This document shows, piece by piece, positions 13,566-46,448 of a stretch of 64,000 nt of DNA. The stretch covers positions 186,001 to 250,000 of IMG/VR virus record IMGVR_UViG_3300027736_001324; one strand, given 5' to 3'. A program made the translations under genes and the position numbers. Below the pieces are notes generated by a model. It had not been told where the DNA came from, ran no database searches, and saw only the letters and a program-made list of their open reading frames with translations. Every line of letters starts with the position of its first letter. The first letter of the stretch is position 1.

Positions 13566-16500
13566 TAGTTTTAAACTAAGTGACGCAGTTACATTCCACG
13601 ACAAACTTAACCCTAAGTTATGGAATAGCACTAAGTTGCGCCCAGATGTTAGAGAACGGCTATTAATAATAGCACAAGACTTTTTACAAGAATTAGGGGT
13701 AAACGATTTAGATGTTAAAGATATAACAATATCTGGCAGTAACGCAGCGTTTAGTTACACTAAGCATAGTGATTTGGATTTACATATATTAGTAGACATG
13801 GGTAACTTACCTGTAGATGAAGTATATAGAGAATTATTTACAGCAAAGAAAACAATATATAATGACACACATGACATAAGAATTCATACTATTCCAGTAG
13901 AATTATATGTACAGGATAGTAGACAACCTGTAGTAAGTTTAGGTGAATATAGTGTAATGAACGACCAGTGGATAAGAATACCCACTAAGCGTAGAAGTGA
14001 TTTTGACCAAACCGCCACCAAAAGCAAATATGAAAAGTTATTAAGTTTAATAGAGATCGCCCTCAAGTCAAAGAAGTATAGCAAAGTAAAACATATAATA
14101 GACACAATCAAAAGATATAGACAAGCAGGTTTAGATAAAGGTGGTGAGTTTGGTCCTGAGAATTTAGCATATAAGATGTTGCGTAGTCAGGGATATATTA
14201 CGAAGTTATATGATTTAAGAGACAAGTTACATAGTGAGAAGTTATCGTTTGAGACTATGTATCAGAATATAGATGAGAATGAAGAAACAAATCATTGGTA
14301 CGATGCTGGCGTGAAGGATGCTACTCGTGGTGCTAGACCTAATCCACGCACATATTTGCCAACACTTAAAGACAAGCAAGCAAAGCATCCAGAAGAAGTA
14401 TATTTTTATATGAATGGGTATAAAAGTGTTAAGCAAGGTGTGGCGGAAGGCTCCGAGAACAATAACCCAATAGCAAATAAAATATTCTTTGCTCGTAGTA
14501 ATAAAACACCCAAAGGATGGAGTTATGACCATGTGGGGTTTATAACTCAAGATGGAAAACAAATTCAAATGAGTGGGCATAAAGGCAATGATGTATATGT
14601 CACTAACGATGTGACTGATGATCCGGAGTTTCCCAAACAAAATATCAAAATTGTATCATTATCAAAACCAGTATCGGTTCCTACAACTAACTCAGTAGAA
14701 GCAGAAAATTGCGGAACATTTGTGGCAAATGTATTACGAGCCAATGGTATAAAAGATTTTGATACACAAAAACTATATAGTGTGTTCAAAAAGCCTCAAG
14801 AGCAAGGTGTGGCGGAAGATAAAGAAAATAACAATTCAAGATTAGATGAAATTTTATATAAGTTATGTAATATTGTTAAAAAAGAAATAAAAGAAAAGAC
14901 AGGGGAACACGCTGTTGCTGCTTGTATTATTGATCCTGATAACAGAATAGTAGCAAAAACAAGTAAAGACAAACACAGTAGATGGATTCATGCTGAACAC
15001 AATGCCATTGATACATATGAAAAAAAGTATGGTGAAGTACCAGAAGGCAGTATTATAGTAACTACATTAAGCCCCTGCAATGAATATGATGATAGAACCT
15101 CCGATGAAAGATTTGGTGAAAGTTGTACAGATTACATAAACAGCAAAGGCATTAAAAAAGTCTATTGTGGATATATGGATCCTACACAAGATAATTATAA
15201 CAGAGAATTTAATGTCATAGAAACTAGTGACACCGACCTTCGTAGGCAATGTAAACAGTTTGCTGATACTTTTTTGAAGAAAAATATAGATGAAGCGTTT
15301 GATACTCCACTTCCAATAACATGGGAGAAAGGTATGCATGGTGATATTGATGCACTTGCTAAATTACCCGATGGATCAAATTTAAGCATTATGTTTAATA
15401 AACAAGATAATATTAAACCTGATGACAAGACATGGATGGTTGAATTTTATAGAAACAACAGTCAAGAAGTAACAGGTGAGGGTGACGCACAAAAAGTATT
15501 TTCTACTGTGCTAGTTGCTATTCAACAATTCATTAAAAAATACAAACCACTAAAAATCTATTTCTCAGCAAGCAAAGAGATGGATCCGACTATAAATTAC
15601 GGCCCAGATGATGTTGTGCCTAATCCTGAAAGCCGTGCTAAGTTATATGATAGAATGGTACTGCGTTATGCTAAATCTTGGGGATATAAGTTTTTCCGTG
15701 CTGATAACGGTTCTTCTGTTATATATCAATTGTCAAGAATACCAAAACAAACGGCTGTGGGTGAAGATTACACCATGCAATTTGCTGCTGAAAAAACTCC
15801 ACCAGTAAGTCCCTATGCCGGCGTTAAAGATAATCAATATCGTGGTGGAATAAGTGAAGCCTCTGGTAAAAAAATCAGTTTCAAAGTACAAAAAGGCAAT
15901 GGAAAATTCTCTACCACTTTAACTGTTAACAATACACCAGCTGGAATATATCAATATGACAGTAACACTGGGCGTAGCATTGCTGAAGTTTATCCAGAAT
16001 TCAAAGGAAAAGGACTAGGTAAATTATTAGTTTTACATGCTATCTACACCGCAGCAAAATTAGGATTAGATTTCCAAGAAGATGAATCAAGAACCAGTGC
16101 TTATGATAATGTGTTAGATAGTTTAAGCAGCAACGGTTATATTGTAGATGATGATGGATATTGGTATGTTACAGGTGACGGGGAGCAATATCTAAAACAA
16201 GCATTGAACGAAGCAAGTGGGTATATCCCAAGCGAAAAAACTCCTGCAATAAATCCATACGGCGGTCTTAAAGATAACCAATTTCGTGGTGGGATAAGTG
16301 AAGCAGTTTCTCCTAAATATGTAACTAGAGTTGATATGACACCCATTAAAGATTTTGAATCTGGTATGAAAACATATTATGGAACAGATGATTGGCATGA
16401 AAGCGGGTTAGAAAAGAAAGATAACTTCACACAAGAAATGAAGGGTTTATATGCAGGTGAACCACATCGTACAGCATTATATGCTAGTGGCAATGCAAGT

Positions 16501-17001
16501 AAAACTAGATTCTTAGAATTGAATGATCCTAAAACAGGTCAACCTGTCGTATATTTTGATAAGAAAGATATCCCTAGAATTCGCAACACAAAGACATATG
16601 TTAGTGTGTTTGATGCTAGTAGATTTAAAAAGTTACCAACAGGGGAATACTTTAGTGAGAACCCTGGTAAACCATTGAAACAAGAAGAAATAACCGATCC
16701 TTTCAAGTATATGACGAACAATGGTTGGGTAGTAAGAGTAACTGATGATATTCAAAAAGAATTCAAAAAGGCACAACAACTACATAAAGCAGGCAAGATA
16801 GACCATTATGGTGGTGAAAACTTGACGGAAGCAAGTGGGTATATCCCAAGCGAAAAACAAAAGAATGATCCTAGATATAGCACCGCACTAACAATAGATG
16901 TACACCCAGATTCTATAAAAAAGAACGCAAAAGCCTTCTATTGGAACACCAGTAGAGCAGGAATCCCCCCAACTGCTAAAGCAAACGGCAAAATCTATTA
17001 A
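13546..17001 (+). CDS. multi-module polyprotein: Pol-beta nucleotidyltransferase, permuted NlpC/P60-like, Zn deaminase, GNAT and unknown modules
   Basis: GSNA..DLDLH..VELYVQD; DHVGF..NCGTFV; HAE..PC..C; VYPEFKGKGLG; modules joined at xxE and QGVAE repeats. Confidence 0.8.
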   Translation: MNLKELNSFKLSDAVTFHDKLNPKLWNSTKLRPDVRERLLIIAQDFLQELGVNDLDVKDITISGSNAAFSYTKHSDLDLHILVDMGNLPVDEVYRELFTAKKTIYNDTHDIRIHTIPVELYVQDSRQPVVSLGEYSVMNDQWIRIPTKRRSDFDQTATKSKYEKLLSLIEIALKSKKYSKVKHIIDTIKRYRQAGLDKGGEFGPENLAYKMLRSQGYITKLYDLRDKLHSEKLSFETMYQNIDENEETNHWYDAGVKDATRGARPNPRTYLPTLKDKQAKHPEEVYFYMNGYKSVKQGVAEGSENNNPIANKIFFARSNKTPKGWSYDHVGFITQDGKQIQMSGHKGNDVYVTNDVTDDPEFPKQNIKIVSLSKPVSVPTTNSVEAENCGTFVANVLRANGIKDFDTQKLYSVFKKPQEQGVAEDKENNNSRLDEILYKLCNIVKKEIKEKTGEHAVAACIIDPDNRIVAKTSKDKHSRWIHAEHNAIDTYEKKYGEVPEGSIIVTTLSPCNEYDDRTSDERFGESCTDYINSKGIKKVYCGYMDPTQDNYNREFNVIETSDTDLRRQCKQFADTFLKKNIDEAFDTPLPITWEKGMHGDIDALAKLPDGSNLSIMFNKQDNIKPDDKTWMVEFYRNNSQEVTGEGDAQKVFSTVLVAIQQFIKKYKPLKIYFSASKEMDPTINYGPDDVVPNPESRAKLYDRMVLRYAKSWGYKFFRADNGSSVIYQLSRIPKQTAVGEDYTMQFAAEKTPPVSPYAGVKDNQYRGGISEASGKKISFKVQKGNGKFSTTLTVNNTPAGIYQYDSNTGRSIAEVYPEFKGKGLGKLLVLHAIYTAAKLGLDFQEDESRTSAYDNVLDSLSSNGYIVDDDGYWYVTGDGEQYLKQALNEASGYIPSEKTPAINPYGGLKDNQFRGGISEAVSPKYVTRVDMTPIKDFESGMKTYYGTDDWHESGLEKKDNFTQEMKGLYAGEPHRTALYASGNASKTRFLELNDPKTGQPVVYFDKKDIPRIRNTKTYVSVFDASRFKKLPTGEYFSENPGKPLKQEEITDPFKYMTNNGWVVRVTDDIQKEFKKAQQLHKAGKIDHYGGENLTEASGYIPSEKQKNDPRYSTALTIDVHPDSIKKNAKAFYWNTSRAGIPPTAKANGKIY
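14434..14451 (+). repeat. QGVAEG junction repeat copy 1
   Basis: CAAGGTGTGGCGGAAGGC. Confidence 0.95.
14803..14820 (+). repeat. QGVAE junction repeat copy 2
   Basis: CAAGGTGTGGCGGAAGAT. Confidence 0.95.
15790..16304 (+). repeat. 71-bp imperfect direct repeat flanking GNAT module
   Basis: 15790-15860 vs 16234-16304 (EKTPxxxPYxGxKDNQxRGGISEA). Confidence 0.9.
16210..16857 (+). repeat. 30-bp perfect direct repeat
   Basis: GAAGCAAGTGGGTATATCCCAAGCGAAAAA (EASGYIPSEK) at 16210-16239 and 16828-16857. Confidence 0.95.
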
Positions 17002-17022
17002 GTTTCCATATTGTGGTATTTT

Positions 17023-17030
17023 GATAAATA
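17023..17030 (+). promoter_or_regulatory. T4-like late promoter
   Basis: GATAAATACTCTAT identical to 10108-10121. Confidence 0.65.
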
Positions 17031-17053
17031 CTCTATAACTTTGGGAAACCGTC

Positions 17054-18616
17054 ATGAGATTTAAGCAAATAGTAGAAAATTCAACAACAGCAGGATCAGT
17101 CGCAACCGTAGCACAGCCTATGATGACTCAAACCCGTGAAAGTGTAGATGTCAAGGGACTAAAGCCCGTAAAACAATTAATGAAGGGCACTAAAAAGAAA
17201 GGTCCCTACGCTAATAGTATTGTTGAAGGAAAAGTTAAAGAACTTATCAGCGATTTAAAAAACTTAACTTCTTATGATTTTGAAAAGAAACACAAACAAT
17301 CTAAGGCTGACGTTAGAGCCGACATGAAGAAAGTCACCGAAGATGATCTTTCAGAACAAGACTTAATCGTTATCCCAGGACAAGGTAGACTAAGAGGTAC
17401 TGGATTTACAAAGCATGACCCTGATCGTGCTGAACATGAAGGTCAAACACTAAAGAATAGTTTACACACTATCATTCGTTTAGCAACTCATTTAGACAAA
17501 GAATTAACAGTAAGAGATAACTTCCCAGAATGGGTGTCAGAGAAAGTCGGTTCAATCAAGGGTGACATGCTTTCTGTAATGAACTATATAATCAGCAGCC
17601 AAGAAATGCGACATGATCCAGATACTATAAATGAACTCAGTTCTGCTCTGTTACAAACAGCCGCACAAGCTGCTACAGACAAACGTAATCAAGCAATGGA
17701 TCCCGAGTTACATAATGCATTAGGTGGCGGCTATATGAATCCATTAGCAAAACATTATGATAATGTATCACAAAAAATGGACAATAGGGCAGCACAAGTA
17801 AAAAGAAAAGAAACGATACAAAATATCGCTTCTAAAATCGCTTCTCCGGCGGTGATGCGTAAGATGGGTATGAATGAAGGCTCACAACGAGTTGATTCAA
17901 TTGTTACTGACGCATTACGAGTAATGAAGGGTCCAGAAGTAAGTGATGCTGTACTAGCATTAAAGAGAGTATTAGGCGACAGAGCATATAATGAGCGCCG
18001 CGGCTTTTATAGTTTCTATGTTGATCAAATACATGATATGTACGGTCAGCAAGGCGTGGCGGAAGGCGAGTTAGAAGAAGATTTAAGCCGTAGAGGATTT
18101 TTAAGAGGCTTGGGCGCGGCAACGTTAGGTGCTACAGCATTAGGTGCTGCAAGTAAAGCACAGGCAAGTCAAGATTTAGGAAACGGATTTGTTTTAACCA
18201 CTGTTGACGTTTTTGGTGGAAAATTTAAAGCAGTATTAGATACACAATCTGATATACATTATTTGCCAAATCGTCACGAAGGCGGTGGCGCTATTGTTAG
18301 AAGCATGGCTCCTTTTATTATGATAAAGAACGGTCAGACAAACACTGCTATGAATGTTGGGCCAGCTGTTCAGGCTGCATTAAAGAAAGCTGGACTATTG
18401 AAAGGTGTAGAAGAAGGTGTTAAAGAAGGCAAAATTGACTTTGCTAAGAAATTACAAAAGAATGTAGATAATCATAACAAAGCTGTAGTACAAACTAAAA
18501 AAGCTGTAGGTAGCAGAATTTCTGACATTGGCGCCGGCGGCAAAGAATACAATGTAAAGACTGATGCTGCATGGGATGCTGCTAAGAAAAAAGTTAGTGA
18601 AGGTTTAAGGAAATAA
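17054..18616 (+). CDS. multi-module putative internal head protein with internal Tat-signal module
   Basis: MRFKQIVE start, xxE-delimited modules, QGVAEG then SRRGFLRGLGAA...AQA. Confidence 0.7.
   Translation: MRFKQIVENSTTAGSVATVAQPMMTQTRESVDVKGLKPVKQLMKGTKKKGPYANSIVEGKVKELISDLKNLTSYDFEKKHKQSKADVRADMKKVTEDDLSEQDLIVIPGQGRLRGTGFTKHDPDRAEHEGQTLKNSLHTIIRLATHLDKELTVRDNFPEWVSEKVGSIKGDMLSVMNYIISSQEMRHDPDTINELSSALLQTAAQAATDKRNQAMDPELHNALGGGYMNPLAKHYDNVSQKMDNRAAQVKRKETIQNIASKIASPAVMRKMGMNEGSQRVDSIVTDALRVMKGPEVSDAVLALKRVLGDRAYNERRGFYSFYVDQIHDMYGQQGVAEGELEEDLSRRGFLRGLGAATLGATALGAASKAQASQDLGNGFVLTTVDVFGGKFKAVLDTQSDIHYLPNRHEGGGAIVRSMAPFIMIKNGQTNTAMNVGPAVQAALKKAGLLKGVEEGVKEGKIDFAKKLQKNVDNHNKAVVQTKKAVGSRISDIGAGGKEYNVKTDAAWDAAKKKVSEGLRK
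18050..18067 (+). repeat. QGVAEG junction repeat copy 3
   Basis: CAAGGCGTGGCGGAAGGC. Confidence 0.95.
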
Positions 18617-18617
18617 T

Positions 18618-21293
18618 ATGAAAACAAATGAATTTTTAACAGAATTATCTAACGACAAGTTAGGAAAGTACAAAACCGCTGCAGGAAAAGATGCTACTGC
18701 TGCTGATAAAGCTGGTAATTTTAAGCGCGGCAATAAGCGTATGAGTGGCATTACCAATGCAACTAAAAAAGAATTTGCAAATGATGCTAAAAAGGTATCA
18801 GAAAGTAAGCAATTTGTTTTAAATGAATCTTTATTAATGGAAGATCCCATTTATCGTCAATTTAAAAGTGTAAGTAAGTATATTGCTGAACGTAGACTTA
18901 GCAAACAAGAAATCTATCAAATATTTGCTGATGCTGAAACCGGCATGACAAGTAAAGATACTGGTGCTAATCGTACAATGCTTGGCCGTGGTAAAGATGT
19001 AACAGGTAAAGCAGTTACCAGTGTTAAAGATGCTGTATCAGGTGTTTTAAACTCTATACAATCTTCTGCTCCAGTAGCAGCCGTTGATGTTGCATATGAT
19101 CAAGCTACAGCTGCCTTAGGAAAATTAACCGGCGGAGATAAAAGCAAGATAATGAAATCTATCATTGGATATCGTAATCTTGCTAAACAATATCCTAAAA
19201 CAGCAGGATTTGCTAAAGCAGCATTGGTTGCTGCTGTAGGACTTGCTACCGGTGGAGCAGGACTACCTGCTATTGCAGGTTTAACTTATGCACTTGATTC
19301 TGCAATTAGAGGCGATAAGTTATCAAGTGTAATTGGTAAGGGTGCCGGCGCTGCTGCGTTAGCATACGGTGGACAAGCTGCGGCACAATATGCTCAAGGT
19401 GGCGCTGATATTCCAGGAGCAAATCCACATCAACTTGATCCGTCACAAATGCAACAAGGCCCAGGTGGTGGAGGAGGTGGCGGTGCAGGTGGTGCTGATA
19501 TTCCTGGAGCAAATCCACATCAATTAGATCCATCACAAATGCAATCAGGATCCGGTGGTGCTGATATTCCTGGAGCGAACCCGCATCAATTAGATCCGTC
19601 ACAAATGCAACAAGCAGCAGGCGGTTATAAGGAAGTAATAAAGACAGTAGCAAAAGGAGATACATTAAGTAATATTGCTCAACAATACGAAACTAGTGTT
19701 GAAGCATTAATGAGAGCAAATCCTCAAATAACAAATCCCGATGCTTTAGCAATAGGAACTAAACTTAATATACCTCCAGTAAATGCTGATACTTATCTGC
19801 AAGGTGTAGGTACTGCTGCTGATACTGCTGCCAAAACTGCGTCTGGCGCATATGATAGTGTACCGGCTGCATTAGGTAAACAAGCAGCAGCCAATCGTGC
19901 CGGTGTTACTGAAAGTATTTGGAAAAATCATTCTCCTAAACTAGATAAAAACATTATAGAATCTATTAATTTTAAAAAGTTATCAGCATATGATTTAATA
20001 GACAAGAAAACTACTGCGTTCAACTGGGCATTAAATGAAAGTATTGGTAATAAAAATAGAAATATAAATTTAACTACAGTAGGGGTATATACTATATTTG
20101 AAAATGTTGACCGTTACCGTCTTGCTGTAATGGAAGTAGCAGGAGTTCCGGGCAGCACTCGTCCAGAGCAGTATCGTCCAGATGAGCCGGAAGGTAAAGG
20201 TAAGGAAAGCAAACCAGGTTTAATTGGTAGAGGACTTAATTGGTTAGACAAAACTGCCGGCAAAGTAGGCGGCGCATTAAGTAATTTTGGACATCAGTTC
20301 ACTACAAACGTTACAAAAGAAAAACTAAAAATGAATTGGACTCAAAAAGGTGAGCCAAGTGATTCAGATGAAGTAGCGGCTTTTATGAAAAGTCAAGGTG
20401 TACCAGAAGATGTAATTTCAACAGTATACACAAAGATGGGTCTACCTTTTACTATGACTCCCGCTGCAGCCGCAACTGCCCCGGCGGCAAACACAGGATC
20501 AACAAGTGCTAATACTAGTGGTGCTGGTGCAGGCGCATTTAGTTCAATGGCAAATCAATTACCTAAATCAACTAATACATCATCTACTGGCGGCACAACT
20601 ACAAATACATCAACTGGATTAACACATACAAGCAAAGCAGTTGCACCAACATCAGGTGGTGCAGGTGGGACAAGTAGTGTAGGCGGTATGTCACAACCAT
20701 CACAGCCTAATAGTCCTAGTCAACAACAAGCAGTGGCTCGCACAGTAAGACAACAGATTGATGACATTATGCATACCATAATGACTCAACATAATGACGA
20801 CCAACCATCATTAGTAAAATATTTGCGCCAACGTCTTGATAGTAGTTTTCCCGGTGATGCTACAAACGCAGCAGCACCAAAAAGAGCAGCACCTAAAAAA
20901 GCAGCACCTAAAAAAGCAGCGCCCAAAACAGCAGCACCTAAAGGCAAAAAACCTGACAACACAGTAGCGATGCCAAAACGTGAAAAATTCCGTATAGGCA
21001 AAGACGAAATCAAACCCGATAATCCCATGTATGATAAAATTAAGGCCGCTAGCGGGACAAATGAATCATTAGGATTAAACTATCCAGAAACATATGAACA
21101 AACTAATGATAAATTTAAAAGCAAAGGTCAACGTAGAGTTGCTGCACTAACCAATGAAGAAGAAAAACAACGTTTAGATCCTAAATGCTGGACTGGTTAT
21201 AAAAAGCAAGGCACTAAGATGAAGGGTGGTACTAGAGTTAATAACTGTGTCCCAATAAAAGAATCAGCAATATTACAAGGCTTAAGAGGATAA
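18618..21293 (+). CDS. multi-module putative virion/ejection protein with LysM domain
   Basis: MKTNEFLTE start, Gly/Ala hydrophobic segment, LysM (VAKGDTLSNIAQQY...NPQITNPDALAIGTKLNIP), AAPKK repeats, KCWTGY..NCVP module. Confidence 0.72.
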   Translation: MKTNEFLTELSNDKLGKYKTAAGKDATAADKAGNFKRGNKRMSGITNATKKEFANDAKKVSESKQFVLNESLLMEDPIYRQFKSVSKYIAERRLSKQEIYQIFADAETGMTSKDTGANRTMLGRGKDVTGKAVTSVKDAVSGVLNSIQSSAPVAAVDVAYDQATAALGKLTGGDKSKIMKSIIGYRNLAKQYPKTAGFAKAALVAAVGLATGGAGLPAIAGLTYALDSAIRGDKLSSVIGKGAGAAALAYGGQAAAQYAQGGADIPGANPHQLDPSQMQQGPGGGGGGGAGGADIPGANPHQLDPSQMQSGSGGADIPGANPHQLDPSQMQQAAGGYKEVIKTVAKGDTLSNIAQQYETSVEALMRANPQITNPDALAIGTKLNIPPVNADTYLQGVGTAADTAAKTASGAYDSVPAALGKQAAANRAGVTESIWKNHSPKLDKNIIESINFKKLSAYDLIDKKTTAFNWALNESIGNKNRNINLTTVGVYTIFENVDRYRLAVMEVAGVPGSTRPEQYRPDEPEGKGKESKPGLIGRGLNWLDKTAGKVGGALSNFGHQFTTNVTKEKLKMNWTQKGEPSDSDEVAAFMKSQGVPEDVISTVYTKMGLPFTMTPAAAATAPAANTGSTSANTSGAGAGAFSSMANQLPKSTNTSSTGGTTTNTSTGLTHTSKAVAPTSGGAGGTSSVGGMSQPSQPNSPSQQQAVARTVRQQIDDIMHTIMTQHNDDQPSLVKYLRQRLDSSFPGDATNAAAPKRAAPKKAAPKKAAPKTAAPKGKKPDNTVAMPKREKFRIGKDEIKPDNPMYDKIKAASGTNESLGLNYPETYEQTNDKFKSKGQRRVAALTNEEEKQRLDPKCWTGYKKQGTKMKGGTRVNNCVPIKESAILQGLRG
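19398..19613 (+). repeat. three coding repeats GGADIPGANPHQLDPSQMQ
   Basis: Copies start at 19398, 19488, 19554. Confidence 0.9.
20871..20945 (+). repeat. five 15-bp AAPK(K/R/T/G) tandem repeats
   Basis: GCAGCACC(T/A)AAAAAA-type units. Confidence 0.9.
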
Positions 21294-21295
21294 TT

Positions 21296-21736
21296 ATGTT
21301 AACAGAAGATTTAAAAGTGTTATTGGCAAGTGTTAACTCATTATCCATCAAAGCACAAAACTTTCATTGGAATGTAGAGGGAGATAACTTCCCTCAATAT
21401 CACGAATTCTTTGGCAACTTCTATGAAGAAATATACAGTTCAGTAGATAAAATTGCTGAATACATTCGTACATTAGACAGTTATAGTCCTGGCAGCTTAA
21501 CACGCTATGCTGAATTAACTATCATTCAAGATCAACTTAAGATTCCACGTGCTGAATTAATGTTTGCTGAATTGTATGAAGATAATGCTAGAATGATTGA
21601 TTTGCTTAATCATTGCTTTGCTTCTGCTACACAAGAAAATAAACAAGGTATCGCTAACTTTATTGCTGAAAGGTTAGATGCTCACGAAAAACATCAATGG
21701 ATGGTTCGTAGTGTTCTAAAGAAAGCCCGTGCATAA
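21296..21736 (+). CDS. dps: Dps/ferritin-like protein
   Basis: HWNVEG..F...H..F...Y, DKIAEYIR, HEKHQWM. Confidence 0.9.
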   Translation: MLTEDLKVLLASVNSLSIKAQNFHWNVEGDNFPQYHEFFGNFYEEIYSSVDKIAEYIRTLDSYSPGSLTRYAELTIIQDQLKIPRAELMFAELYEDNARMIDLLNHCFASATQENKQGIANFIAERLDAHEKHQWMVRSVLKKARA

Positions 21737-22290
21737 TGAGAGCAAGAGAGTTTTTATCTGAGTCCTATCGCTCGGGTATAAATGAAGAACTCAGGGTCGA
21801 TGTGCCTAACGAAGAATGGTTACAAGACGCAATTGACTATGCTAAAAGTAAAAGTCCCGATCGCAATGGTCTACCTTACATGGGAAAGACCACTGCTACA
21901 GTTAGGAACGTTGTGGTTCCGGTCAGCATATTAAGACGGATACCAGGCATGCGTCAAGAGCAATCAAAGGTAAGACACCACGATCTTGCTGCTATTAGAA
22001 AAATTATGCACACTACAGGTAAACTGCCATTACACGGACATACTGGACAAGAATATAAACCTTTTATTAATGTAGCATATGATGGTAGTGCTTGGGTCAA
22101 TGAAGGTAATCATAGGATCATGGCTGCGGCCGAACTTGGTTGGGAGTCATTGCCAGTGGAAATTTCATACTTTGACGGCGGTGAAAGAATCAAGTCAGGT
22201 CCAATGTATCCGGGTAAGATTGGGCTTGCAGAAGCAATGGATCAAGGAACTAGATGGACCGGTGATGAACCATATAGACAAACGGATTAA
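21736..22290 (+). CDS. ParB/Srx-like domain protein with capsid-targeting-like N-terminus
   Basis: EGNHRIMAAAELGWESLPV; starts MRAREFLSE. Confidence 0.7.
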   Translation: MRAREFLSESYRSGINEELRVDVPNEEWLQDAIDYAKSKSPDRNGLPYMGKTTATVRNVVVPVSILRRIPGMRQEQSKVRHHDLAAIRKIMHTTGKLPLHGHTGQEYKPFINVAYDGSAWVNEGNHRIMAAAELGWESLPVEISYFDGGERIKSGPMYPGKIGLAEAMDQGTRWTGDEPYRQTD

Positions 22291-38534: not shown

Positions 38535-39383
38535 ATGGCAAAATTAAAAGTCGCAGAATTATTCTATAGCATTCAAGGTGAAGGTCGCTATATGGGCGTC
38601 CCTTCTGTCTTTCTACGCACATTTGGATGTAACTTCAAATGTGCAGGGTTTGGTATGCCTAAGGGCGAACTAAGCAAAGAAGTAGAAGATATCGCTAGTC
38701 GCATACATTACTATACTGATTATAAACAACTACCATTGGTCAGTACAGGCTGTGATAGTTATGCTAGTTGGGACCCAAGATTCAAAGACTTAAGTCCGAT
38801 GCTTGAAACAGATAGTATTGTTGATAGCATTATGGATATGCTACCACACAATCGTTGGTTGAGTGAACATCTTGTTATCACAGGCGGCGAACCATTATTA
38901 GGTTGGCAACGTAGTTATGTTGATTTGCTTTCACATGAAAACATGCGCGGATTACAAGAATTAACTTTTGAAACTAACGGAACACAAGAATTGCAACAAG
39001 ACTTAAAAATCTTTTTACATAAATGGTGTATCAGTCGTAGCATGGGTGCAATAACATTTAGCGTCAGTCCTAAACTAAGTATCAGCGGAGAGAAGTGGGA
39101 AGAAGCAATAAGACCTGAAGTTGTATATGAATATACTCAAGTGGGTCATGTATATCTTAAATTTGTTGTAGCAAACAAACAAGACGTAGAAGAAGCACAA
39201 GAAGCGGTTAATGAATACAGTAAGCGTGGCTTTAGAGGTCATGTATATTTGATGCCTTGCGGCGGTGTTGAAAGTTTATATAATATGAATGCTAGAACAG
39301 TTGCTAATGAAGCAATGCGTTTAGGCTGGCGTTATAGTGATAGACTTCAGGTACCTCTTTTCAAGAACGCATGGAATACTTGA
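38535..39383 (+). CDS. queE: 7-carboxy-7-deazaguanine synthase (radical SAM)
   Basis: ELFYSIQGEG, FLRTFGCNFKC...CDS, TGGEP, ETNGT, SVSPKL. Confidence 0.92.
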   Translation: MAKLKVAELFYSIQGEGRYMGVPSVFLRTFGCNFKCAGFGMPKGELSKEVEDIASRIHYYTDYKQLPLVSTGCDSYASWDPRFKDLSPMLETDSIVDSIMDMLPHNRWLSEHLVITGGEPLLGWQRSYVDLLSHENMRGLQELTFETNGTQELQQDLKIFLHKWCISRSMGAITFSVSPKLSISGEKWEEAIRPEVVYEYTQVGHVYLKFVVANKQDVEEAQEAVNEYSKRGFRGHVYLMPCGGVESLYNMNARTVANEAMRLGWRYSDRLQVPLFKNAWNT

Positions 39384-41271: not shown

Positions 41272-42089
41272 AAAAAGTATTAATAACAGGTAACAGTGGT
41301 TACATCGGTAGTCATCTTAGTAAGATGCTACGCACAGATTATCAAATATATGGATTGGATATTAATCCATCACAATACTCCGTTACCGATCATTATCAAC
41401 TCAATATCAATAAGGTGTTTAATATTGATATGGAATTTGACGCAGTAATTCATTTAGCAGCATTAGTTAATGTTAGTGAAAGTGAAAGAATGCCCATTCA
41501 ATATTACATCACTAACTTAAATGGTACAATGAATGTTATCAATAAAGTAAAGACAAAGAACTTTATCTTTGCTAGCACTGGTGCTGCACAAGATTGTGAA
41601 AGTGCATATGGTATCAGTAAACGTGCTGCTGAGGATGTGGTGCGTGAGTATTGTACAGTACACAATCCCAAAGATTACACTATCTTTAGATTCTATAACG
41701 TAATCGGTAGTGATGGGTTTGCGCCAACTAATCCAGACGGATTGATGTATAACCTGATGAAGGCTAAAGAGAGAGGCGAGTTTACTATCTACGGTACTGA
41801 CTATGGTTCAAGTGACGGTACTTGTGTGCGTGATTACGTTCATGTTAATGAGATATGTGACGCATTATCTAGTGCTATTGAAAAGCCAAGCAATCAGATA
41901 GAATGCTTGGGGCATGGAGTTGGACATTCAGTTAGAGATATTGTTAATCTATATAAAAAGGTTAACAACGTTGAATTTCTAGTAAAGCACGGACCAAGAA
42001 GAAAGGGTGACTTAGCAGTATCTGTATTAGATAATGTGTCACCCTATATGAAAGAGTTATACTCTTTGGAAGAACTACTTAAGGTCTAA
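41268..42089 (+). CDS. NAD-dependent epimerase/dehydratase (GalE-like)
   Basis: ITGNSGYIGSH, HLAA, YGISK (YxxxK), FRFYNV, RDYVHV. Confidence 0.92.
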   Translation: MKKVLITGNSGYIGSHLSKMLRTDYQIYGLDINPSQYSVTDHYQLNINKVFNIDMEFDAVIHLAALVNVSESERMPIQYYITNLNGTMNVINKVKTKNFIFASTGAAQDCESAYGISKRAAEDVVREYCTVHNPKDYTIFRFYNVIGSDGFAPTNPDGLMYNLMKAKERGEFTIYGTDYGSSDGTCVRDYVHVNEICDALSSAIEKPSNQIECLGHGVGHSVRDIVNLYKKVNNVEFLVKHGPRRKGDLAVSVLDNVSPYMKELYSLEELLKV

Positions 42090-42461
42090 AAACTTTATTT
42101 GGTTTGTTGAAAACACAACATACCAAACATCATCTCCCTCATCGTGTTCAGCAATGATACTATCATATCCGTCTGCTATTAATTCTTCACGTAGTTCTAA
42201 ATAATCTTCTTTCTCTAGTCCTACTAACTCATCCATTGTTGCTTCATATGTCTTGTTCATGGTCAATGACGCAGATATGATATATTTTCCGTATAGTTTT
42301 GCTTCACGAATAGAAGTAGTAAAAAAATGTCCTAGTACAGCATTTGGATCTCCTGTACTAGTTCCTAGCGTAGCATTATCAAATGACGAGAATTTATTGT
42401 TAGTACCGTGATAGGCAACAACACCCGAACTACTTTCAGCAATAAATTCTCTTGCTCTCAT
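42075..42461 (-). CDS. ADP-ribosyltransferase (ART-PolyVal-like) with capsid-targeting-like N-terminus
   Basis: MRAREFIAE; YHGT, GHFFT, AKLYG, GYDSI, YVVF..NQIK. Confidence 0.8.
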   Translation of the reverse strand: MRAREFIAESSSGVVAYHGTNNKFSSFDNATLGTSTGDPNAVLGHFFTTSIREAKLYGKYIISASLTMNKTYEATMDELVGLEKEDYLELREELIADGYDSIIAEHDEGDDVWYVVFSTNQIKFLDLK

Positions 42462-42462
42462 T

Positions 42463-43971
42463 TTAGTGTCTTAACAATAGTGTACTTAATACACCAGGAT
42501 CGTTAGCACTAACATCACCTTCGCCCGGAGCAACAATAACATTGTACTTCATTCCAGTTGGGATTGAATTTCTCTTAGCCATATATTCAGTATAACTTAA
42601 AATACTTGAAGCACTGATTCCATATTCTGTAGCAATACGTTGTTTCATTTCTTTAAGTGCGGCTTCATCAGCAGGTTGCCATGCTCCGTCATCAGTTTTC
42701 TTCAAGTTACCCTTCTCATCCTTAGCTAACAAGTCATAGAATAGTTTCTCTGGAACAATACGACTATTCTTTGTTGTATCTAATTTAGGGTCTTGCGCCT
42801 TTATTTTCTTCTCTTGCTCAGTGTTAGCACCTTCGCTCCAATTGATAATAAAGTTGTCTGGTTTCTTAGCTAATGCTGCTCCAGCCATCTTAGTGTAAGC
42901 ATAGAACTTAACATCAGGGTGTTTAGCAGCCATCTTTAATGCCATGTCTAAATATTCTGGACTAAAGAAGTCACCGGCATCATGCCAACGAACTGTTGTT
43001 TGCCAACCATCAGGGAATTTCTTATCACCCTTTGCTCCTGCACTTGCTTCTTTTGATATCTCACTACTTAATTGATTAAAGAATCCATCAGGATCATTCA
43101 ACAGATATGTTAATATACGACCATCACTTTGCCATGCTGCTTTAAACTGAATCTTACCGCCCTTCATAGCAAAGCATTCTACTTTACATGAACCTGCACC
43201 CGGGCAAGTATTAACAATGATTAATTTATTGGTTTGTTCATCAAGTGCAATTCCTACTAATGCCGCAAATCCAACATTGAAGAATTGTTCAAACTCTCCG
43301 TTACTATGCTTCATCTTTTCATTTTGCTTTAATAATGATTTAGGACGAATTGCTAATGTTTGTTTAACTGCATCTTCATCATATGTTTTACCATCCGGAC
43401 TCATGTAAGTAACTACGCTACTACGATGGATGTAGGGCATTTTGTATTTGTCACCTTTGGTCTTGCCAGTAGTATACTTTTCGTTACCTTTTTTATCTAT
43501 TTTAACATTACCGCTTTTATCTAAATCAGGAGTACCAACGATACGCTTCATGTAATCTTGAAATTCTTGGCTATCCAAATCACGGGTTTGTGCTGGTAGT
43601 TTAGTTGCTTCATCTAGCCCAGATAGACTACGAATTCTATCTAAGTGTTCCGAGCCTTCCGCCACACCTTTGCGATAATCTGGAAATCCAAACTTGCGAT
43701 AGTATGCTAATGCGTGACCAAACATCTTTTTGTATTCTTCAGTACCCTTTTTGTAACCTTTTGTAGCCAACTCATTTTCAATATGACGAACCATTGGCAT
43801 CTCTGCTTTTAGTAATTCTGGAGCACCTTCCGCCACACCTTGTTCTGATTCTTCATCAGGTTTTGAATCACCTGCACTAGCAACAAATTGCTGAGGTGTC
43901 ATAATCTTTATGCCACTAGGGGCTCCTGGCATCTTTGGCTCTGCGCCCTCTAATAGTTCTTTAAAGTTCAT
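42463..43971 (-). CDS. modular protein with C-terminal GP88-like domain
   Basis: MNFKELLE, two GVAEG junctions, CPGAGSCKVECFA, VRWHDAGDF, YAYTK. Confidence 0.72.
   Translation of the reverse strand: MNFKELLEGAEPKMPGAPSGIKIMTPQQFVASAGDSKPDEESEQGVAEGAPELLKAEMPMVRHIENELATKGYKKGTEEYKKMFGHALAYYRKFGFPDYRKGVAEGSEHLDRIRSLSGLDEATKLPAQTRDLDSQEFQDYMKRIVGTPDLDKSGNVKIDKKGNEKYTTGKTKGDKYKMPYIHRSSVVTYMSPDGKTYDEDAVKQTLAIRPKSLLKQNEKMKHSNGEFEQFFNVGFAALVGIALDEQTNKLIIVNTCPGAGSCKVECFAMKGGKIQFKAAWQSDGRILTYLLNDPDGFFNQLSSEISKEASAGAKGDKKFPDGWQTTVRWHDAGDFFSPEYLDMALKMAAKHPDVKFYAYTKMAGAALAKKPDNFIINWSEGANTEQEKKIKAQDPKLDTTKNSRIVPEKLFYDLLAKDEKGNLKKTDDGAWQPADEAALKEMKQRIATEYGISASSILSYTEYMAKRNSIPTGMKYNVIVAPGEGDVSANDPGVLSTLLLRH
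43654..43842 (-). repeat. GVAEG junction repeats copies 4-5
   Basis: 43654-43671 (AAAGGTGTGGCGGAAGGC) and 43825-43842 (CAAGGTGTGGCGGAAGGT) on minus strand. Confidence 0.95.
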
Positions 43972-46448
43972 TTCTTATTGTTCCTAATGTATTGTTCAGC
44001 AAGCATTACTAATTCATGTAGTTCTTCAATGCTTTCGCAATGCCATCTACGCAAACTTTTATTTATATTGCTATTTGGATCGTGTGCTGTTTTTGCACCA
44101 GTACGATGTTTCTTCATTCCACGCATTCTAGCACAGAATGATTTACGACGGGCAGCGGCTTTGCTACCTTTTTTAAGTTTGCTTGGTTTAGTTGTTACTG
44201 CTGTTTGAATCTTGCTGCCTGGATGACTACGGCGATAACTGGCTACACTCTTTTTACTCATCCCACCTGCACGTTTATTATTGTGCTTTGACCAATTCTC
44301 GCCCTCATCAACTTCTTTCTTTGCCATGCCGATACCATCACAAGCACCGCATTTATACTTTTTAGCGCCCGGTACGTCATTAGCAGGAAGAATTTTTCCG
44401 TCAGGTGCTTTCCATAAAGTACCACGACCGTTACATCTTTTACAACTAGTATTAGGGTTCTTTACAGTGGCACCTGGCATGTAGTCACTCTTGCTGAAAC
44501 CGCCTGGCAAGCCTTCCGCCACACCTTGCTGACCCGGCACTGTATCAACAATGTTTATCATTTTATCAGGAACTATTTGTACAGGAACATTGCCGTTGTA
44601 TCCGGCGGCTTGGTATGCGATAAATCTATGATTCCCATCTATTACAAAAAGTTTACCCTTGTTATTCCAAACAACTAACGGACCTAATTTCCCATTTTGT
44701 TTTAGTTGTGGTAAAAGATGGTTATTGACCCATTGAGCAACCTTTGGATCCTTCATTGACTTACCATTTTCCCACATTTGTAATTTATTAAAAGGTGCCT
44801 CAGTTACTGGCAAACTTTTCTTTATCCTGTCATCAACAGTAGCACCTTTATAAGCAGGATTTGTATAGATAGTTACTAGTTGCTGTTCCAAGCCTTCCGC
44901 TACACCTTGCTGTTGTTCTGCCTTTACAAATTGATTGGGTCTTGGCATATCTAACCTGCGTGGATCATTCATTATGGCAGGATCTTGCATTAATTTGCTT
45001 TTAGGATTAATCCAGAATCCAACCATTGTTCCTTTTAAGGGTAATGAACCTTTTGGAACAACTACTGCTTCTTCAAATTCACCACCTGCTTTGGCAGTAG
45101 GTTCAGCATATTTTGCTTTGCCTTTTGCGTTAGTTCTTGCCATTGGGTCTGTGTTCTGTGACCGTGCTTCACCGTCTTTTTTTAGATACGGGTTAAATGC
45201 TAGACCTTTGATATTTGTACTTTGACTTGTACCTAGTGTTTTGAAATTGCTTTCGACTGCATTACGATCTAAAACTAGTATTGCATCTCTACCAATGCCA
45301 GCCATTTGATTGCTTGCATTTGATCCACTGGCATAGCCCCAATCTCTGGTCACGCTTACTGTAGGCAGTTTAGTCTGAGCCGAGGTTGCTGCCTGCGGAC
45401 TAGTTGCTGATCGGATACTACCGGACGATAGCATTCCTTTAAGACCGTTTGCATCCGTAGCATGATAAAGATAGTTTCCGCCTATACCTTCATTTAGCCC
45501 TTCCGCTACACCTTGCTTGTCAATACTTCCCCGTATACCGCATTTAGCACAATGATATTGTGTTAGCGTTGGGTGTTCTTTTTTCTTTACAGGACCATGG
45601 CAATGTGGGCAGGTACCTGTGGCCATTGCCTTGACTTCTTTACTCATATCTTCTTTGGAGCCTTCCGCCACACCTTTTGATGAAGCAGTTGGAGATTGCA
45701 GTGCCCTAGTTTTAACTCCAGGCATGCCACCTAATGTCGCTAATTTTTTAACCCAGCCTTCAGCGTCAGTATCATTAAGAGATGTAACTACAGTGCCATC
45801 GGGGTCAATAGAATCTATACCAGTAAGTTTATCGCTAGCATATCCTGTATTATCAAAATAATGTCCAGGTACTGTACCAACTTTATTAGAACGATCTAAG
45901 CGAGTTTTATACTCAGCATCCCCTTTTTGTTTGTGTACCTCTAAACCTTTAGAAATTGCTGCACGAACTTGTTGTTGTTGTGTGGTTTCAGTAGAGCCTT
46001 CCGCCACACCTTGTTCTTCAATATTAGGGTTATTGATTTGTTCTGCTACACTATTCAATTTGTCATTGCTAACTGTAACAAAACTATACATCCAACCATC
46101 TAAACTAACACCCTTATCTAATTGATTCTTAATATGTATAGCATTTTTAATAATTTCACGAATCTCGCCTTGAGCCATTCCATCAATTTGCTCATCTTCC
46201 ATAGCATAACCTTCGGTTTTGGGCTTCTTCCCAGCCTTTTTCATGGCAATGGCAATTGCGGCCTGTCGTTTTGGGTTAGCCGCTTCATCTGTTGCTGACT
46301 TTTTTAATGCATCCGCTGTTGGAGCACCTTTACTTCCGGGCTTACGCATATGTTCACCGGAACCATTCTTGATTCGGTCACGCTTGGCATGTATGTTTGC
46401 CCATAACCCAGGCTTTTTGTTTTCGGATATAATTTCACTAAATCTCAT
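43968..46448 (-). CDS. multi-module polyprotein: Zn ribbon, ART-like, ParB-like, CxxCxGxG and basic modules
   Basis: MRFSEIISE; five GVAEG junctions; CPHC..CAKC; LYHAT..SVTR..EEAV; IDGNHR; CKRCNGRG..CGACDGIG; RRKSFCARM. Confidence 0.8.
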   Translation of the reverse strand: MRFSEIISENKKPGLWANIHAKRDRIKNGSGEHMRKPGSKGAPTADALKKSATDEAANPKRQAAIAIAMKKAGKKPKTEGYAMEDEQIDGMAQGEIREIIKNAIHIKNQLDKGVSLDGWMYSFVTVSNDKLNSVAEQINNPNIEEQGVAEGSTETTQQQQVRAAISKGLEVHKQKGDAEYKTRLDRSNKVGTVPGHYFDNTGYASDKLTGIDSIDPDGTVVTSLNDTDAEGWVKKLATLGGMPGVKTRALQSPTASSKGVAEGSKEDMSKEVKAMATGTCPHCHGPVKKKEHPTLTQYHCAKCGIRGSIDKQGVAEGLNEGIGGNYLYHATDANGLKGMLSSGSIRSATSPQAATSAQTKLPTVSVTRDWGYASGSNASNQMAGIGRDAILVLDRNAVESNFKTLGTSQSTNIKGLAFNPYLKKDGEARSQNTDPMARTNAKGKAKYAEPTAKAGGEFEEAVVVPKGSLPLKGTMVGFWINPKSKLMQDPAIMNDPRRLDMPRPNQFVKAEQQQGVAEGLEQQLVTIYTNPAYKGATVDDRIKKSLPVTEAPFNKLQMWENGKSMKDPKVAQWVNNHLLPQLKQNGKLGPLVVWNNKGKLFVIDGNHRFIAYQAAGYNGNVPVQIVPDKMINIVDTVPGQQGVAEGLPGGFSKSDYMPGATVKNPNTSCKRCNGRGTLWKAPDGKILPANDVPGAKKYKCGACDGIGMAKKEVDEGENWSKHNNKRAGGMSKKSVASYRRSHPGSKIQTAVTTKPSKLKKGSKAAARRKSFCARMRGMKKHRTGAKTAHDPNSNINKSLRRWHCESIEELHELVMLAEQYIRNNKK
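44511..46013 (-). repeat. GVAEG junction repeats copies 6-10
   Basis: 44511-44528, 44892-44909, 45498-45515, 45660-45677, 45996-46013. Confidence 0.95.

What the first reader, a model, noticed from the sequence alone, without database searches (positions are those of the whole stretch)
14434..46013. An 18-bp in-frame repeat (CAAGGTGTGGCGGAAGGC = QGVAEG) joins unrelated effector domains in four giant ORFs: a candidate domain-cassette shuffling system
Seen: ten near-identical copies at 14434, 14803, 18050 (+) and 43654, 43825, 44511, 44892, 45498, 45660, 45996 (-). All are in frame, sit exactly between unrelated domains, and spacings within an ORF are multiples of 3 (369, 171, 381, 606, 162, 336). 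Conservation exceeds what the peptide needs: Ala is GCG in 10/10 and Val GTG in 8/10 in an AT-rich genome that elsewhere appears to favour GCA/GCT and GTA/GTT. Inference: the repeat is a recombination junction letting whole domains be gained, lost or reordered without breaking frame, like an integron array working inside proteins. Polyvalent phage proteins are known; a fixed DNA junction for them is not known to me.
Basis: partly seen in the sequence, partly recalled or inferred. Interest (0 to 1): 0.92.

Follow-up and report, generated by a model that had tools for sequence, protein, structure and literature searches.

The report
Recombining linker in phage cargo polyproteins
A fixed 18-base coding sequence (peptide QGVAEG) joins independent protein modules in large proteins of uncultured T4-like giant phages; it marks exactly where modules have been swapped between phages, and is probably also where the phage head protease cuts the chain into separate injected proteins.

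Summary
There are ten in-frame copies of CAAGGTGTGGCGGAAGGC in four ORFs (chance 0.03). They use GCG and GTG, which make up only 7% and 11% of Ala and Val codons in this genome.

The motif is not private to this phage. It occurs in at least 120 IMG/VR contigs, almost always in frame in long ORFs, and is essentially absent from 596 Gb of cellular genomes. In 80 loci fetched by protein homology alone, 74 distinct GVAEG sites use GGT 74/74, GTG 69/74 and GCG 71/74.

Modules are shuffled exactly at the motif. Of 248 distinct junctions, 142 pairs share the upstream module and 199 the downstream one, but only 1 pair shares both. One module follows 15 different partners. BLAST homology blocks between syntenic relatives end at the motif (p about 1e-45).

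Old junctions decay at synonymous sites but keep a hydrophobic residue at P3 and Glu at P1. Motif-bearing ORFs start with T4-like capsid-targeting leaders (MRAREFIAE against T4 MKTYQEFIAE). A sister contig of the same phage carries T4 gp13, gp15 and gp18.

Best reading: capsid-targeted cargo polyproteins whose cleavable linker is also the crossover site. This is a new variant of known T4-type shuffling devices. The mechanism is inferred, not shown.

The parts
14434..14451 (+). motif copy, QGVAEG, between module A1 (nucleotidyltransferase-like) and A2
14803..14820 (+). motif copy, QGVAED, between A2 and the cytidine/dCMP deaminase module
18050..18067 (+). motif copy, QGVAEG, in ORF B, directly before a Tat-signal module
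43654..43671 (-). motif copy, KGVAEG, before the GP88-family module of ORF D
43825..43842 (-). motif copy, QGVAEG, after the 43-aa N-terminal leader of ORF D
44511..44528 (-). motif copy in ORF E, between the ParB-like module and the zinc-ribbon/DUF6321 module
44892..44909 (-). motif copy in ORF E (Val codon GTA)
45498..45515 (-). motif copy in ORF E (Val codon GTA)
45660..45677 (-). motif copy in ORF E, KGVAEG; 3' boundary of module E2
45996..46013 (-). motif copy in ORF E; 5' boundary of module E2
13546..17001 (+). ORF A, 1151 aa, about 7 modules (NTase-like, CHAP-like?, deaminase, DUF6934, GNAT-like, DUF6886, tail). Later junctions use L-x-E|A and I-S-E|A instead of the motif
17054..18616 (+). 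ORF B, 520 aa, leader MRFKQIVE; one intact and several decayed motif copies
18068..18166 (+). twin-arginine (Tat) signal-like peptide starting 6 residues after the motif. The same module follows the motif in 3 other loci
   Evidence: weak Pfam TAT_signal hit
18618..21293 (+). ORF C, 891 aa, leader MKTNEFLTE, LysM; only decayed motif copies (19902, 20181, 20397). Its first and last modules sit next to intact motifs in other loci
21736..22290 (+). 184-aa ORF with CTS-like leader MRAREFLSE
42075..42461 (-). 128-aa ORF, leader MRAREFIAE followed by an ART-PolyVal ADP-ribosyltransferase domain (layout like T4 Alt)
42463..43971 (-). ORF D, 502 aa: leader, motif, 52-aa cassette, motif, GP88-family module
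43968..46448 (-). ORF E, 826 aa, leader MRFSEIISE, six modules separated by five motif copies
17867..17880 (+). decayed motif (GMNEG) at the position where L007 and L015 have an intact QGVAEG before the same module
15754..15767 (+). decayed motif (AVGED) at the A4/A5 module boundary
16210..16239 (+). EASGYIPSEK junction, copy 1. It is 30 nt identical to copy 2 inside this genome, but its codons drift between genomes (control)
16828..16857 (+). EASGYIPSEK junction, copy 2
11040..11120 (+). gene boundary (stop/start) in the window. In a sister contig of the same sample the same upstream module is fused in frame through QSGVAEE to other modules

Best explanation
The four ORFs, and their neighbours with the same kind of N-terminus, are cargo polyproteins of an uncultured T4-superfamily giant phage. 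Each has a short T4-like capsid-targeting leader followed by a string of independent modules: deaminase, nucleotidyltransferase-like, ParB-like, zinc ribbons, GP88-family, DUF6321, a Tat-exported module and others.

The 18-base element encodes the linker Q-G-V-A-E|G. It has two proposed roles.

(1) Shown by comparison: it is the place where modules are gained, lost and exchanged in frame, within and between related phages.

(2) Inferred: the exchange is homologous (microhomology) recombination across the GC-rich 18-mer during mixed infection or between copies in one genome. This works like PeSL cassettes or the gp38 glycine-rich motifs of T4-type phages. Every newly made junction carries the consensus DNA, which explains the uniform synonymous sites. 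Junctions that then persist drift away from it.

(3) Inferred: the peptide V-A-E|G is a site for the T4-type prohead protease, which needs an aliphatic P3 and Glu at P1. One leader could therefore carry many modules into the prohead, where they would be cut apart and later injected with the DNA.
For: Junction role:
- Among 248 distinct junctions, 142 pairs share the upstream flank and 199 the downstream flank, but only 1 shares both. Pseudo-junctions shifted by 41-60 aa share both in 21-85% of cases.
- The GP88 module follows 15 different partners and the D leader precedes 13 different modules.
- BLAST block ends between the window and relatives fall within 12 nt of a motif copy in 111/310 cases, against 7.5% expected (p=8e-46). 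For ORFs A-B the figure is 8/61 against 2.5% (examples).
- A cassette is replaced between the two motif positions in orthologues.
- There is a strain-level fusion/fission at a motif.

DNA uniformity:
- 74 sites ascertained by protein homology use GGT 74/74, GTG 69/74 and GCG 71/74. Background usage is 0.54, 0.10 and 0.06.
- Conservation is sharply limited to the 18 nt.
- A control peptide in the same genes drifts.

Recency rather than site-wise selection:
- At one homologous junction in 44 contexts, core mismatches are 0:11, 1:8, 2:0 and 3-8:25.
- Consensus junctions each have a unique partner. Decayed ones are shared by diverged relatives and use ordinary codons.

Protease and capsid targeting:
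- Decayed junctions keep Glu at P1 in 19/23 and V/I/L/M at P3 in 13/23, but lose Gly at P4 (5/23) and Ala at P2 (4/23). These match the positions that decide processing of the T4 CTS (PMC9026906).
- Leaders such as MRAREFIAE, MRAREFLSE, MKTNEFLTE and MRFSEIISE resemble T4 IPII/IPIII MKTYQEFIAE.
- Such leaders occur on 58/118 motif-bearing ORFs against 189/1530 other ORFs.
- An ART-PolyVal domain sits behind such a leader, as in T4 Alt.
- ORF A's other junctions read L-N-E|A, L-T-E|A and I-S-E|A.
- A Tat signal begins 6 residues after the motif in 4 contexts.
- T4 gp21/gp23/gp20 homologues lie on motif-bearing contigs L022, L048 and L073.
- T4 gp13, gp15 and gp18 families are on the sister contig of this phage.
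Against: - No recombination event, excised circle or cleaved protein has been observed; everything is comparative.
- 18 bp is short for efficient homologous recombination.
- The 3' positions of the motif co-segregate with neither flank. Only positions 0, 5 and 8 follow the upstream module, so the crossover point inside the motif is not resolved.
- Some replacements in close relatives have no intact motif at their edges (L135).
- The prohead protease and capsid genes of this particular genome were not reached.
- (V/I/L)-x-E is a common tripeptide. The conserved Glu-Gly/Ser could instead belong to the downstream module.
- Some junctions have lost the Glu (GVAGG, KGTAGN).
- A Tat-exported fragment is an odd cargo for a capsid.
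- The genes lie among replication genes, not in a head module. Eighty head-module loci hold only one motif copy.
Confidence: 0.6

Rival explanations
1. The motif is only a peptide-level linker or cleavage site. Its uniform DNA reflects recent common descent of the copies, and it plays no part in recombination. Modules carry their own linker when moved by illegitimate recombination.
For: Peptide constraints persist in decayed copies. Some cassette replacements lack intact motifs. The 3' motif variants are not linked to either flank.
Against: Breakpoints pile up within a few nucleotides of the motif. Nearly every consensus-class junction has a unique partner combination. Illegitimate joins would not reproduce one identical 18-mer at hundreds of different junctions. 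The mismatch distribution is bimodal with no 2-mismatch class.
Confidence: 0.13
2. The 18-mer is a nucleic-acid signal under direct selection at every site. Candidates are an RNA element (Shine-Dalgarno-like pause, internal initiation, RNase site) or a DNA site (Chi-like hotspot, binding site). Its reading frame would be secondary.
For: There is extreme synonymous conservation. The sequence contains AGGTG and GGAAGG, which resemble ribosome-binding sequences. The codons used are rare in this genome.
Against: At a homologous junction the DNA decays freely to ordinary codons while the peptide positions P3 and P1 stay. The motif is always in one frame and at module edges. ATG occurs within 4 codons downstream in only 20/218 cases, against 12/218 in a control. 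There is no conserved flank that could form a structure.
Confidence: 0.1
3. A dedicated site-specific system (a true protein-level integron): a recombinase or nuclease recognises the 18-mer and moves cassettes as circles.
For: The sequence is fixed across many genomes and cassettes are bounded by it. An occupied versus a single-motif arrangement is seen (window against L131). GIY-YIG-like genes lie near a motif-bearing ORF in L022 and L048.
Against: No integrase-type family appeared among the ORFs scanned. The 18-mer is not an inverted repeat and has no conserved flanks. T4-type phages shuffle at short conserved motifs using general recombination (PMC2839356, PMC3157838).
Confidence: 0.1
4. 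Metagenome assembly chimeras at a shared repeat create the apparent shuffling.
For: All data are metagenomic contigs.
Against: 18 nt is shorter than assembler k-mers. The frame is always kept. The same junctions recur in independent samples (L121/L122; L134-136). Decay series and linked leader variants are biological patterns.
Confidence: 0.02

Closest known systems
T4 internal proteins IPI-III and Alt: capsid targeting sequence plus gp21 processing
   Same: A short N-terminal leader of the same pattern ends in aliphatic-x-Glu. The cargo behind a conserved leader is diverse (PMC3012670). An ADP-ribosyltransferase sits behind such a leader. The virion genes are of the T4 type.
   Different: In T4 there is one cargo per leader. 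Here up to seven modules follow one leader, separated by a repeated internal site. Packaging and cleavage are not shown here.
Glycine-rich motifs of gp38 adhesins (and His boxes of gp37) in T-even phages
   Same: Short conserved in-frame motifs separate variable segments, and crossovers within the motifs swap the segments (PMC3157838, citing Tetart 1998).
   Different: The glycine-rich motifs form the structural core of one domain in one gene. The present motif is a linker between independent modules, in many genes and many phage genomes, and is identical at synonymous sites.
PeSL mobile regulatory cassettes of T4-type phages
   Same: Repeated conserved DNA flanks small non-essential units. 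Recombination between copies deletes, inserts or replaces them. The authors themselves compare PeSLs to integrons (PMC2839356).
   Different: PeSLs are intergenic, about 100 bp, and consist of a promoter plus a stem-loop, moving whole genes. Here the element is 18 nt of coding sequence and moves protein modules in frame. Mini-circles have not been tested here.
Polyvalent proteins of phages and conjugative elements (Iyer, Burroughs, Anand, de Souza, Aravind 2017)
   Same: Many unrelated conflict-type domains sit in one phage polypeptide. The ART-PolyVal, ParB-like, deaminase and NTase themes are shared. That paper proposes injection with the DNA and proteolytic release.
   Different: That paper invokes built-in metallopeptidase domains and never mentions a linker (0 occurrences). 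No fixed junction sequence is described.
Integron gene cassettes
   Same: The outcome is the same: an ordered array of exchangeable units bounded by a recognisable site.
   Different: There is no integrase and no attC hairpin. The units are protein modules read through in one frame, not promoterless genes.
Junction motifs of polymorphic toxins (VENN of CdiA, the Rhs core-end motif); from my own knowledge, not checked here
   Same: A conserved peptide and its DNA demarcate a variable module. It serves as the crossover point for displacing modules, and in Rhs also as a cleavage site.
   Different: Those are bacterial secreted toxins with one variable C-terminal module and immunity genes. Here the proteins are phage-encoded, carry multiple modules, and no immunity genes were seen.

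Membership tests
Polyvalent proteins (Iyer et al. 2017) | several unrelated domains in one polypeptide encoded by a phage | tested here: met
   ORF A has about 7 modules, ORF E 6, ORF D 3 and ORF B 2. The modules have different family hits and independent homologues.
Polyvalent proteins (Iyer et al. 2017) | hallmark conflict domains of the class | tested here: met
   ART-PolyVal PF18760 scores E=4.7e-14 in the adjacent leader-bearing ORF 42075-42461. A deaminase scores E=9e-12 inside ORF A. The ParB-like hit is only weak.
Polyvalent proteins (Iyer et al. 2017) | delivered into the host with the DNA | not testable with these tools
   This needs virion proteomics of a cultured relative. None is present in the phage collection searched.
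T4-type capsid-targeted internal proteins | N-terminal capsid targeting sequence of about 10 residues | tested here: met
   MRAREFIAE, MRAREFLSE, MKTNEFLTE and MRFSEIISE resemble T4 MKTYQEFIAE. The pattern is enriched on motif-bearing ORFs, 58/118 against 189/1530. This is similarity only.
T4-type capsid-targeted internal proteins | aliphatic-x-Glu processing site | tested here: met
   The leader ends and linkers fit the pattern. P3 and P1 are retained in decayed junctions. Cleavage itself was not tested.
T4-type capsid-targeted internal proteins | gp21-type prohead protease in the same genome | tested here: inconclusive
   The protease was found on motif-bearing contigs L022 and L048, at 35-37% identity to T4 gp21. 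The sister contig of this phage has T4 gp13, gp15 and gp18. Head genes were not reached in about 62 kb of walking.
T4-type capsid-targeted internal proteins | protein present, processed, in the virion | not testable with these tools
   No cultured representative and no proteome are available.
Integron | IntI-type tyrosine recombinase next to the array | tested here: not met
   No such family appeared among the ORFs scanned. Small ORFs were not all scanned.
Integron | attC site with imperfect inverted repeats | tested here: not met
   The 18-mer is not self-complementary, and its flanks carry no conservation.
PeSL cassettes | intergenic early promoter plus stem-loop of about 100 bp | tested here: not met
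   The element is 18 nt of coding sequence inside ORFs.
PeSL cassettes | recombination between copies inserts, deletes or replaces the flanked unit | tested here: met
   This is supported by comparison only.
PeSL cassettes | excised mini-circles | not testable with these tools
   This needs inverse PCR or reads from infected cells.
gp38-type intragenic recombination motifs | short conserved in-frame motif between variable segments, with crossovers in the motif | tested here: met
   Searches support this. Positions 0, 5 and 8 of the 18-mer follow the upstream module.
gp38-type intragenic recombination motifs | motifs form the structural core of one domain | tested here: not met
   The flanking units are independent modules. 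They occur alone or in other orders elsewhere.

The most novel reading that the evidence does not exclude
The 18-mer defines a self-propagating, plug-and-play cassette system for injected phage proteins. Protein modules bounded by it circulate among giant phages of a habitat, possibly as excised circles or with the help of a dedicated nuclease or recombinase. Each cassette insertion automatically supplies the protease site that releases its product in the capsid. This would be a protein-level analogue of the integron that lets phages reassort anti-host cargo within a few generations.
Probability: 0.22. Interest if true: 0.9.

Novelty: new variant of a known kind. Interest (0 to 1): 0.74.

Why it matters
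It would show how large phages reassort what they inject, one protein module at a time, without breaking reading frames. It ties together three ideas that have been studied separately: T4 capsid-targeting leaders, polyvalent proteins, and motif-mediated shuffling.

It also gives a simple sequence tag (GGTGTGGCGGAAGG in frame, plus a leader of the form M-R-x-x-E-F-I-x-E) for finding hundreds of candidate injected modules in metagenomes. Many of these modules have no known function and are likely to act on host defences.

The linker may be a natural design for multi-cargo packaging in T4-type capsids, which are already used as protein delivery vehicles.

Tried and rejected
- Internal translation start after the motif: ATG lies within 4 codons in only 9% of junctions against 5.5% in a control.
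- Conserved RNA or DNA structure: there is no conservation outside the 18 nt.
- Direct selection on the DNA at each site: contradicted by the decay series.
- Prophage or cellular origin: the exact 18-mer gives 56 loci in 596 Gb of genomes. Nearly all are single hits in GC-rich genomes; only one misbinned phage contig carries several copies.
- Known defence or anti-defence families: there are no PADLOC hits.
- Close cultured relative: there is no near DNA match, and only single modules match in phage records.
- Motif as a head-module feature: 80 loci around gp21-like proteases hold one copy in 480 kb.
- Walking from the window towards head genes: six look-ups reached tail and neck genes and then replication genes, but no capsid or protease.
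- Mapping the crossover inside the motif by linkage of variants: only the 5' half gave a signal.
- Module E4 as a second ADP-ribosyltransferase: it has no similarity to the ART-PolyVal ORF.
- Literature: the string GVAEG appears in no phage paper in the library. Searches on polyvalent proteins and linkers, or on internal proteins and polyproteins, found no description of this junction. Repoila et al. 1994 could not be read.

Full report
**1. The observation**

A search for the 18-mer with up to 3 mismatches returns exactly the ten listed copies, each with 0-2 mismatches. The shuffle expectation is 0.03. No further copy with 2 mismatches to the 14-nt core exists in the window.

All ten copies read [QK]GVAE[GD] in the frame of long ORFs:
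- ORF A, 13546-17001 (+), 1151 aa, 2 copies
- ORF B, 17054-18616 (+), 520 aa, 1 copy
- ORF D, 42463-43971 (-), 502 aa, 2 copies
- ORF E, 43968-46448 (-), 826 aa, 5 copies

In 61 window ORFs, GCG is 7% of Ala codons, GTG 11% of Val and GGC 20% of Gly. The motif nevertheless uses GCG in 10/10 copies and GTG in 8/10.

**2. Where the window comes from**

The window is positions 186,001-250,000 of a 263,709-bp metagenomic contig, JGI 3300027736 Ga0209190_1000002. It carries these genes:
- a family-B DNA polymerase, 43-48% identical to those of giant T4-related phages (Phosso, Atu_ph07, RaK2, 121Q)
- an ATP-dependent DNA ligase
- a Clp-type ATPase

No cultured phage in the collection is close at the DNA level. 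Only single modules of the four ORFs have matches in phage records.

A sister contig from the same sample shares the start of the window. Upstream it carries T4 gp18 sheath, Phage_T4_gp13 and T4-gp15 families. The virion is therefore of the T4 type. Capsid and protease genes were not reached.

**3. The motif is widespread and virus-specific**

Almost all hits lie in frame in long ORFs, often several per ORF. Q, E or K precedes the motif.

The exact 18-mer finds 56 loci in 596 Gb of bacterial and archaeal genomes. Nearly all of these are single hits in GC-rich genomes. Only one misbinned phage contig holds several copies.

**4. The synonymous conservation is real, and it is not ascertainment**

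- In the pattern-fetched loci, 162 of 185 in-frame GVAEG peptides match the DNA pattern. A zero-truncated estimate gives 0.78. Even the 23 non-matching copies stay close to the consensus.
- Conservation stops abruptly at the edges of the 18 nt.
- Eighty loci were fetched purely by homology to the GP88-family part of ORF D. They contain 74 distinct GVAEG sites, compared with background usage in the same ORFs:

| Codon | In motif | Background |
|---|---|---|
| GGT | 74/74 | 0.54 |
| GTG | 69/74 | 0.10 |
| GCG | 71/74 | 0.06 |
| GAA | 63/74 | 0.76 |
| GGC | 49/74 | 0.22 |

- A control peptide at another module edge of the same genes, E[AS]SGYIP, has freely varying codons between loci.

**5. Modules are exchanged exactly at the motif**

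- Among 248 distinct junctions, 142 pairs have similar upstream flanks and 199 have similar downstream flanks. Only one pair is similar on both sides.
- At pseudo-junctions shifted by 41-60 residues, 21-85% of pairs similar on one side are also similar on the other.
- The GP88-family module follows 15 different upstream modules. The ORF D leader precedes 13 different modules. Several other modules show 4-6 partners.
- In orthologues of ORF D the leader and the GP88 module are conserved. The stretch between the two motif positions holds zero to several unrelated cassettes.
- At the nucleotide level, BLAST block ends between the window and relatives fall within 12 nt of a motif copy in 111 of 310 cases for ORFs D-E (7.5% expected, p=8e-46) and in 8 of 61 for ORFs A-B (2.5% expected).
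- In L134-136, module E2 is matched from one flanking motif to the other.
- Other frequent block ends coincide with decayed motif copies.
- Two strains in one sample differ by a fusion. The window has a stop and a new gene at about 11,116. The sister contig continues in frame through QSGVAEE into other modules.

**6. Why the DNA is uniform**

The junction before the GP88 module was examined in 44 distinct contexts from the homology-fetched loci. Mismatches to the 14-nt core were distributed as follows:

| Mismatches | 0 | 1 | 2 | 3 | 4 | 5 | 6 | 7 | 8 |
|---|---|---|---|---|---|---|---|---|---|
| Contexts | 11 | 8 | 0 | 4 | 1 | 6 | 7 | 6 | 1 |

- Junctions in the consensus class each have a different upstream partner.
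- Decayed junctions (KGMAES, LTFKES, AANES and others) are shared by diverged relatives and use ordinary codons.

The sequence is therefore not held constant at a site over time. Uniformity marks junctions that are young. This is what is expected if new junctions are made by crossing over within the consensus sequence.

The first, sixth and ninth bases of the 18-mer co-segregate with the upstream module (p=0.0015, 0.027, 0.004). The 3' variable bases follow neither side. The crossover point inside the motif is therefore only partly mapped.

**7. What the peptide is for**

Decayed junctions keep Glu at P1 (19/23), Ser or Gly at P1' (17/23) and V/I/L/M at P3 (13/23). Gly at P4 survives in only 5/23 and Ala at P2 in 4/23.

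In T4, processing of the capsid targeting sequence depends on its residues 8 and 10, that is P3 and P1 (PMC9026906). Known gp21 sites are ITE, LTE and LIE (PMC5694885).

The T4 IPII and IPIII leaders read MKTYQEFIAE. The window has these comparable leaders:
- MRAREFIAE on ORF 42075-42461, which is an ART-PolyVal ADP-ribosyltransferase with E=4.7e-14; this recalls T4 Alt
- MRAREFLSE on ORF 21736-22290
- MKTNEFLTE on ORF C
- MRFSEIISE on ORF E
- MNFKELLE|G on ORF D
- MRFKQIVE on ORF B

Across all loci such leaders head 58 of 118 motif-bearing ORFs, against 189 of 1530 other ORFs.

Further points that fit the protease reading:
- The later junctions of ORF A read L-N-E|A, L-T-E|A and I-S-E|A.
- In L013 and L039, QGVAEG stands where the window has NEASGY after the same module.
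- A Tat-type signal peptide starts six residues after the motif in ORF B and in three other contexts. This makes sense if a new N-terminus is created there.
- Homologues of T4 gp21 (35-37% identity), gp20 and gp23 lie on motif-bearing contigs L022, L048 and L073.

**8. Synthesis**

Shown:
- the repeat
- its frame
- its synonymous uniformity
- its wide and virus-specific distribution
- its coincidence with module exchange points
- decay at old junctions with P3 and P1 retained
- T4-like leaders on the ORFs

Inferred:
- exchange occurs by homologous recombination across the 18-mer
- the polyproteins are targeted to the prohead, cut at V-A-E|G and injected

**9. Against the model**

- Nothing has been observed directly.
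- 18 bp is short for homologous recombination.
- Some replacements lack intact motifs at their edges.
- Some junctions have lost the Glu.
- The head genes of this genome are unseen.
- Aliphatic-x-Glu is a common tripeptide.

**10. Comparison with what is known**

- T4-type phages have capsid-targeted internal proteins with diverse cargo (PMC3012670).
- They also have crossovers in the glycine-rich motifs of gp38 (PMC3157838).
- PeSL cassettes form mini-circles (PMC2839356).
- Polyvalent proteins are described, but without any linker (PMC5512222).
- The string GVAEG appears in no phage paper in the library. Targeted searches found no description of this junction.

I therefore file it as a new variant of a known kind. 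It works like the T4 shuffling motifs and like a capsid-targeted polyprotein. It is not an integron.

Noticed in passing
window 34482-35162, 37268-37741, 38535-39383, 24306-24914, 29093-30634: A probable 7-deazaguanine (preQ0-type) pathway: GTP cyclohydrolase I (E=6e-62), a PTPS/QueD-like protein, a weak radical-SAM QueE-like protein and a PP-loop ATPase. The 513-aa ORF contains a DSGGFQ stretch but has no family hit. This suggests modified DNA.
   Followed up: partly
window 6334-7140, 7137-9398; L348 17631-19977 (just beyond the window end): The phage encodes a proteostasis set: DnaJ, a ClpA/B-like double-AAA ATPase and, downstream of the window, ClpX-like, ClpS and HSP20 proteins plus a ribosomal protein S21.
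   Followed up: no
window 18068-18166: A Tat-type signal peptide lies in the middle of ORF B, right after the linker. How a capsid-packaged fragment would use Tat export is unexplained.
   Followed up: partly
window 19397-19560 and 20870-20942: ORF C has a 90-nt tandem repeat (1.8 copies, GGADIPGANPHQLDPSQMQ units) and a 15-nt AAPKK repeat (4.9 copies). It also has a LysM domain.
   Followed up: no
window 16210-16239 and 16828-16857: A 30-nt exact direct repeat encoding EASGYIPSEK occurs twice in ORF A. This is a second, genome-local junction repeat, and its codons differ in other genomes.
   Followed up: partly
window 11040-11120 versus L339 19742-19900: Two contigs of one sample are identical up to about 10 nt before a motif copy that only one of them has. 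One has two genes there; the other has a fused multi-module ORF. The window's CAAGCGGA at that spot might be a remnant of the motif.
   Followed up: partly
window 21170-21290 (C-terminus of ORF C); L009, L038, L066, L075: A cysteine-containing C-terminal peptide (KCW..K..GTK.KGG.RVNNCVP) is common in aquatic phage proteins. In other loci it is followed directly by EGVAEG and further modules.
   Followed up: no
window 43971-44320 and 46300-46448; cyanophage and pelagiphage records: The first (about 45 aa) and last (DUF6321) modules of ORF E lie within about 215 bp of each other, under adjacent annotated small genes, in Prochlorococcus phage P-SCSP1 records. The DUF6321 module alone also matches Synechococcus and Pelagibacter phages. 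Here five linkers and four extra modules lie between them.
   Followed up: no
window 21296-21736, 22297-23112, 46498-47553, 3563-4345: Other genes in the window: a ferritin-like protein, a signal-peptide-bearing non-specific DNA/RNA endonuclease, a UvdE UV endonuclease and PhoH.
   Followed up: no
L022 3241-3987, L048 7870-8592: A GIY-YIG-like gene sits between the capsid gene and a motif-bearing ORF. Whether such nucleases stimulate exchange at the motif was not examined.
   Followed up: no
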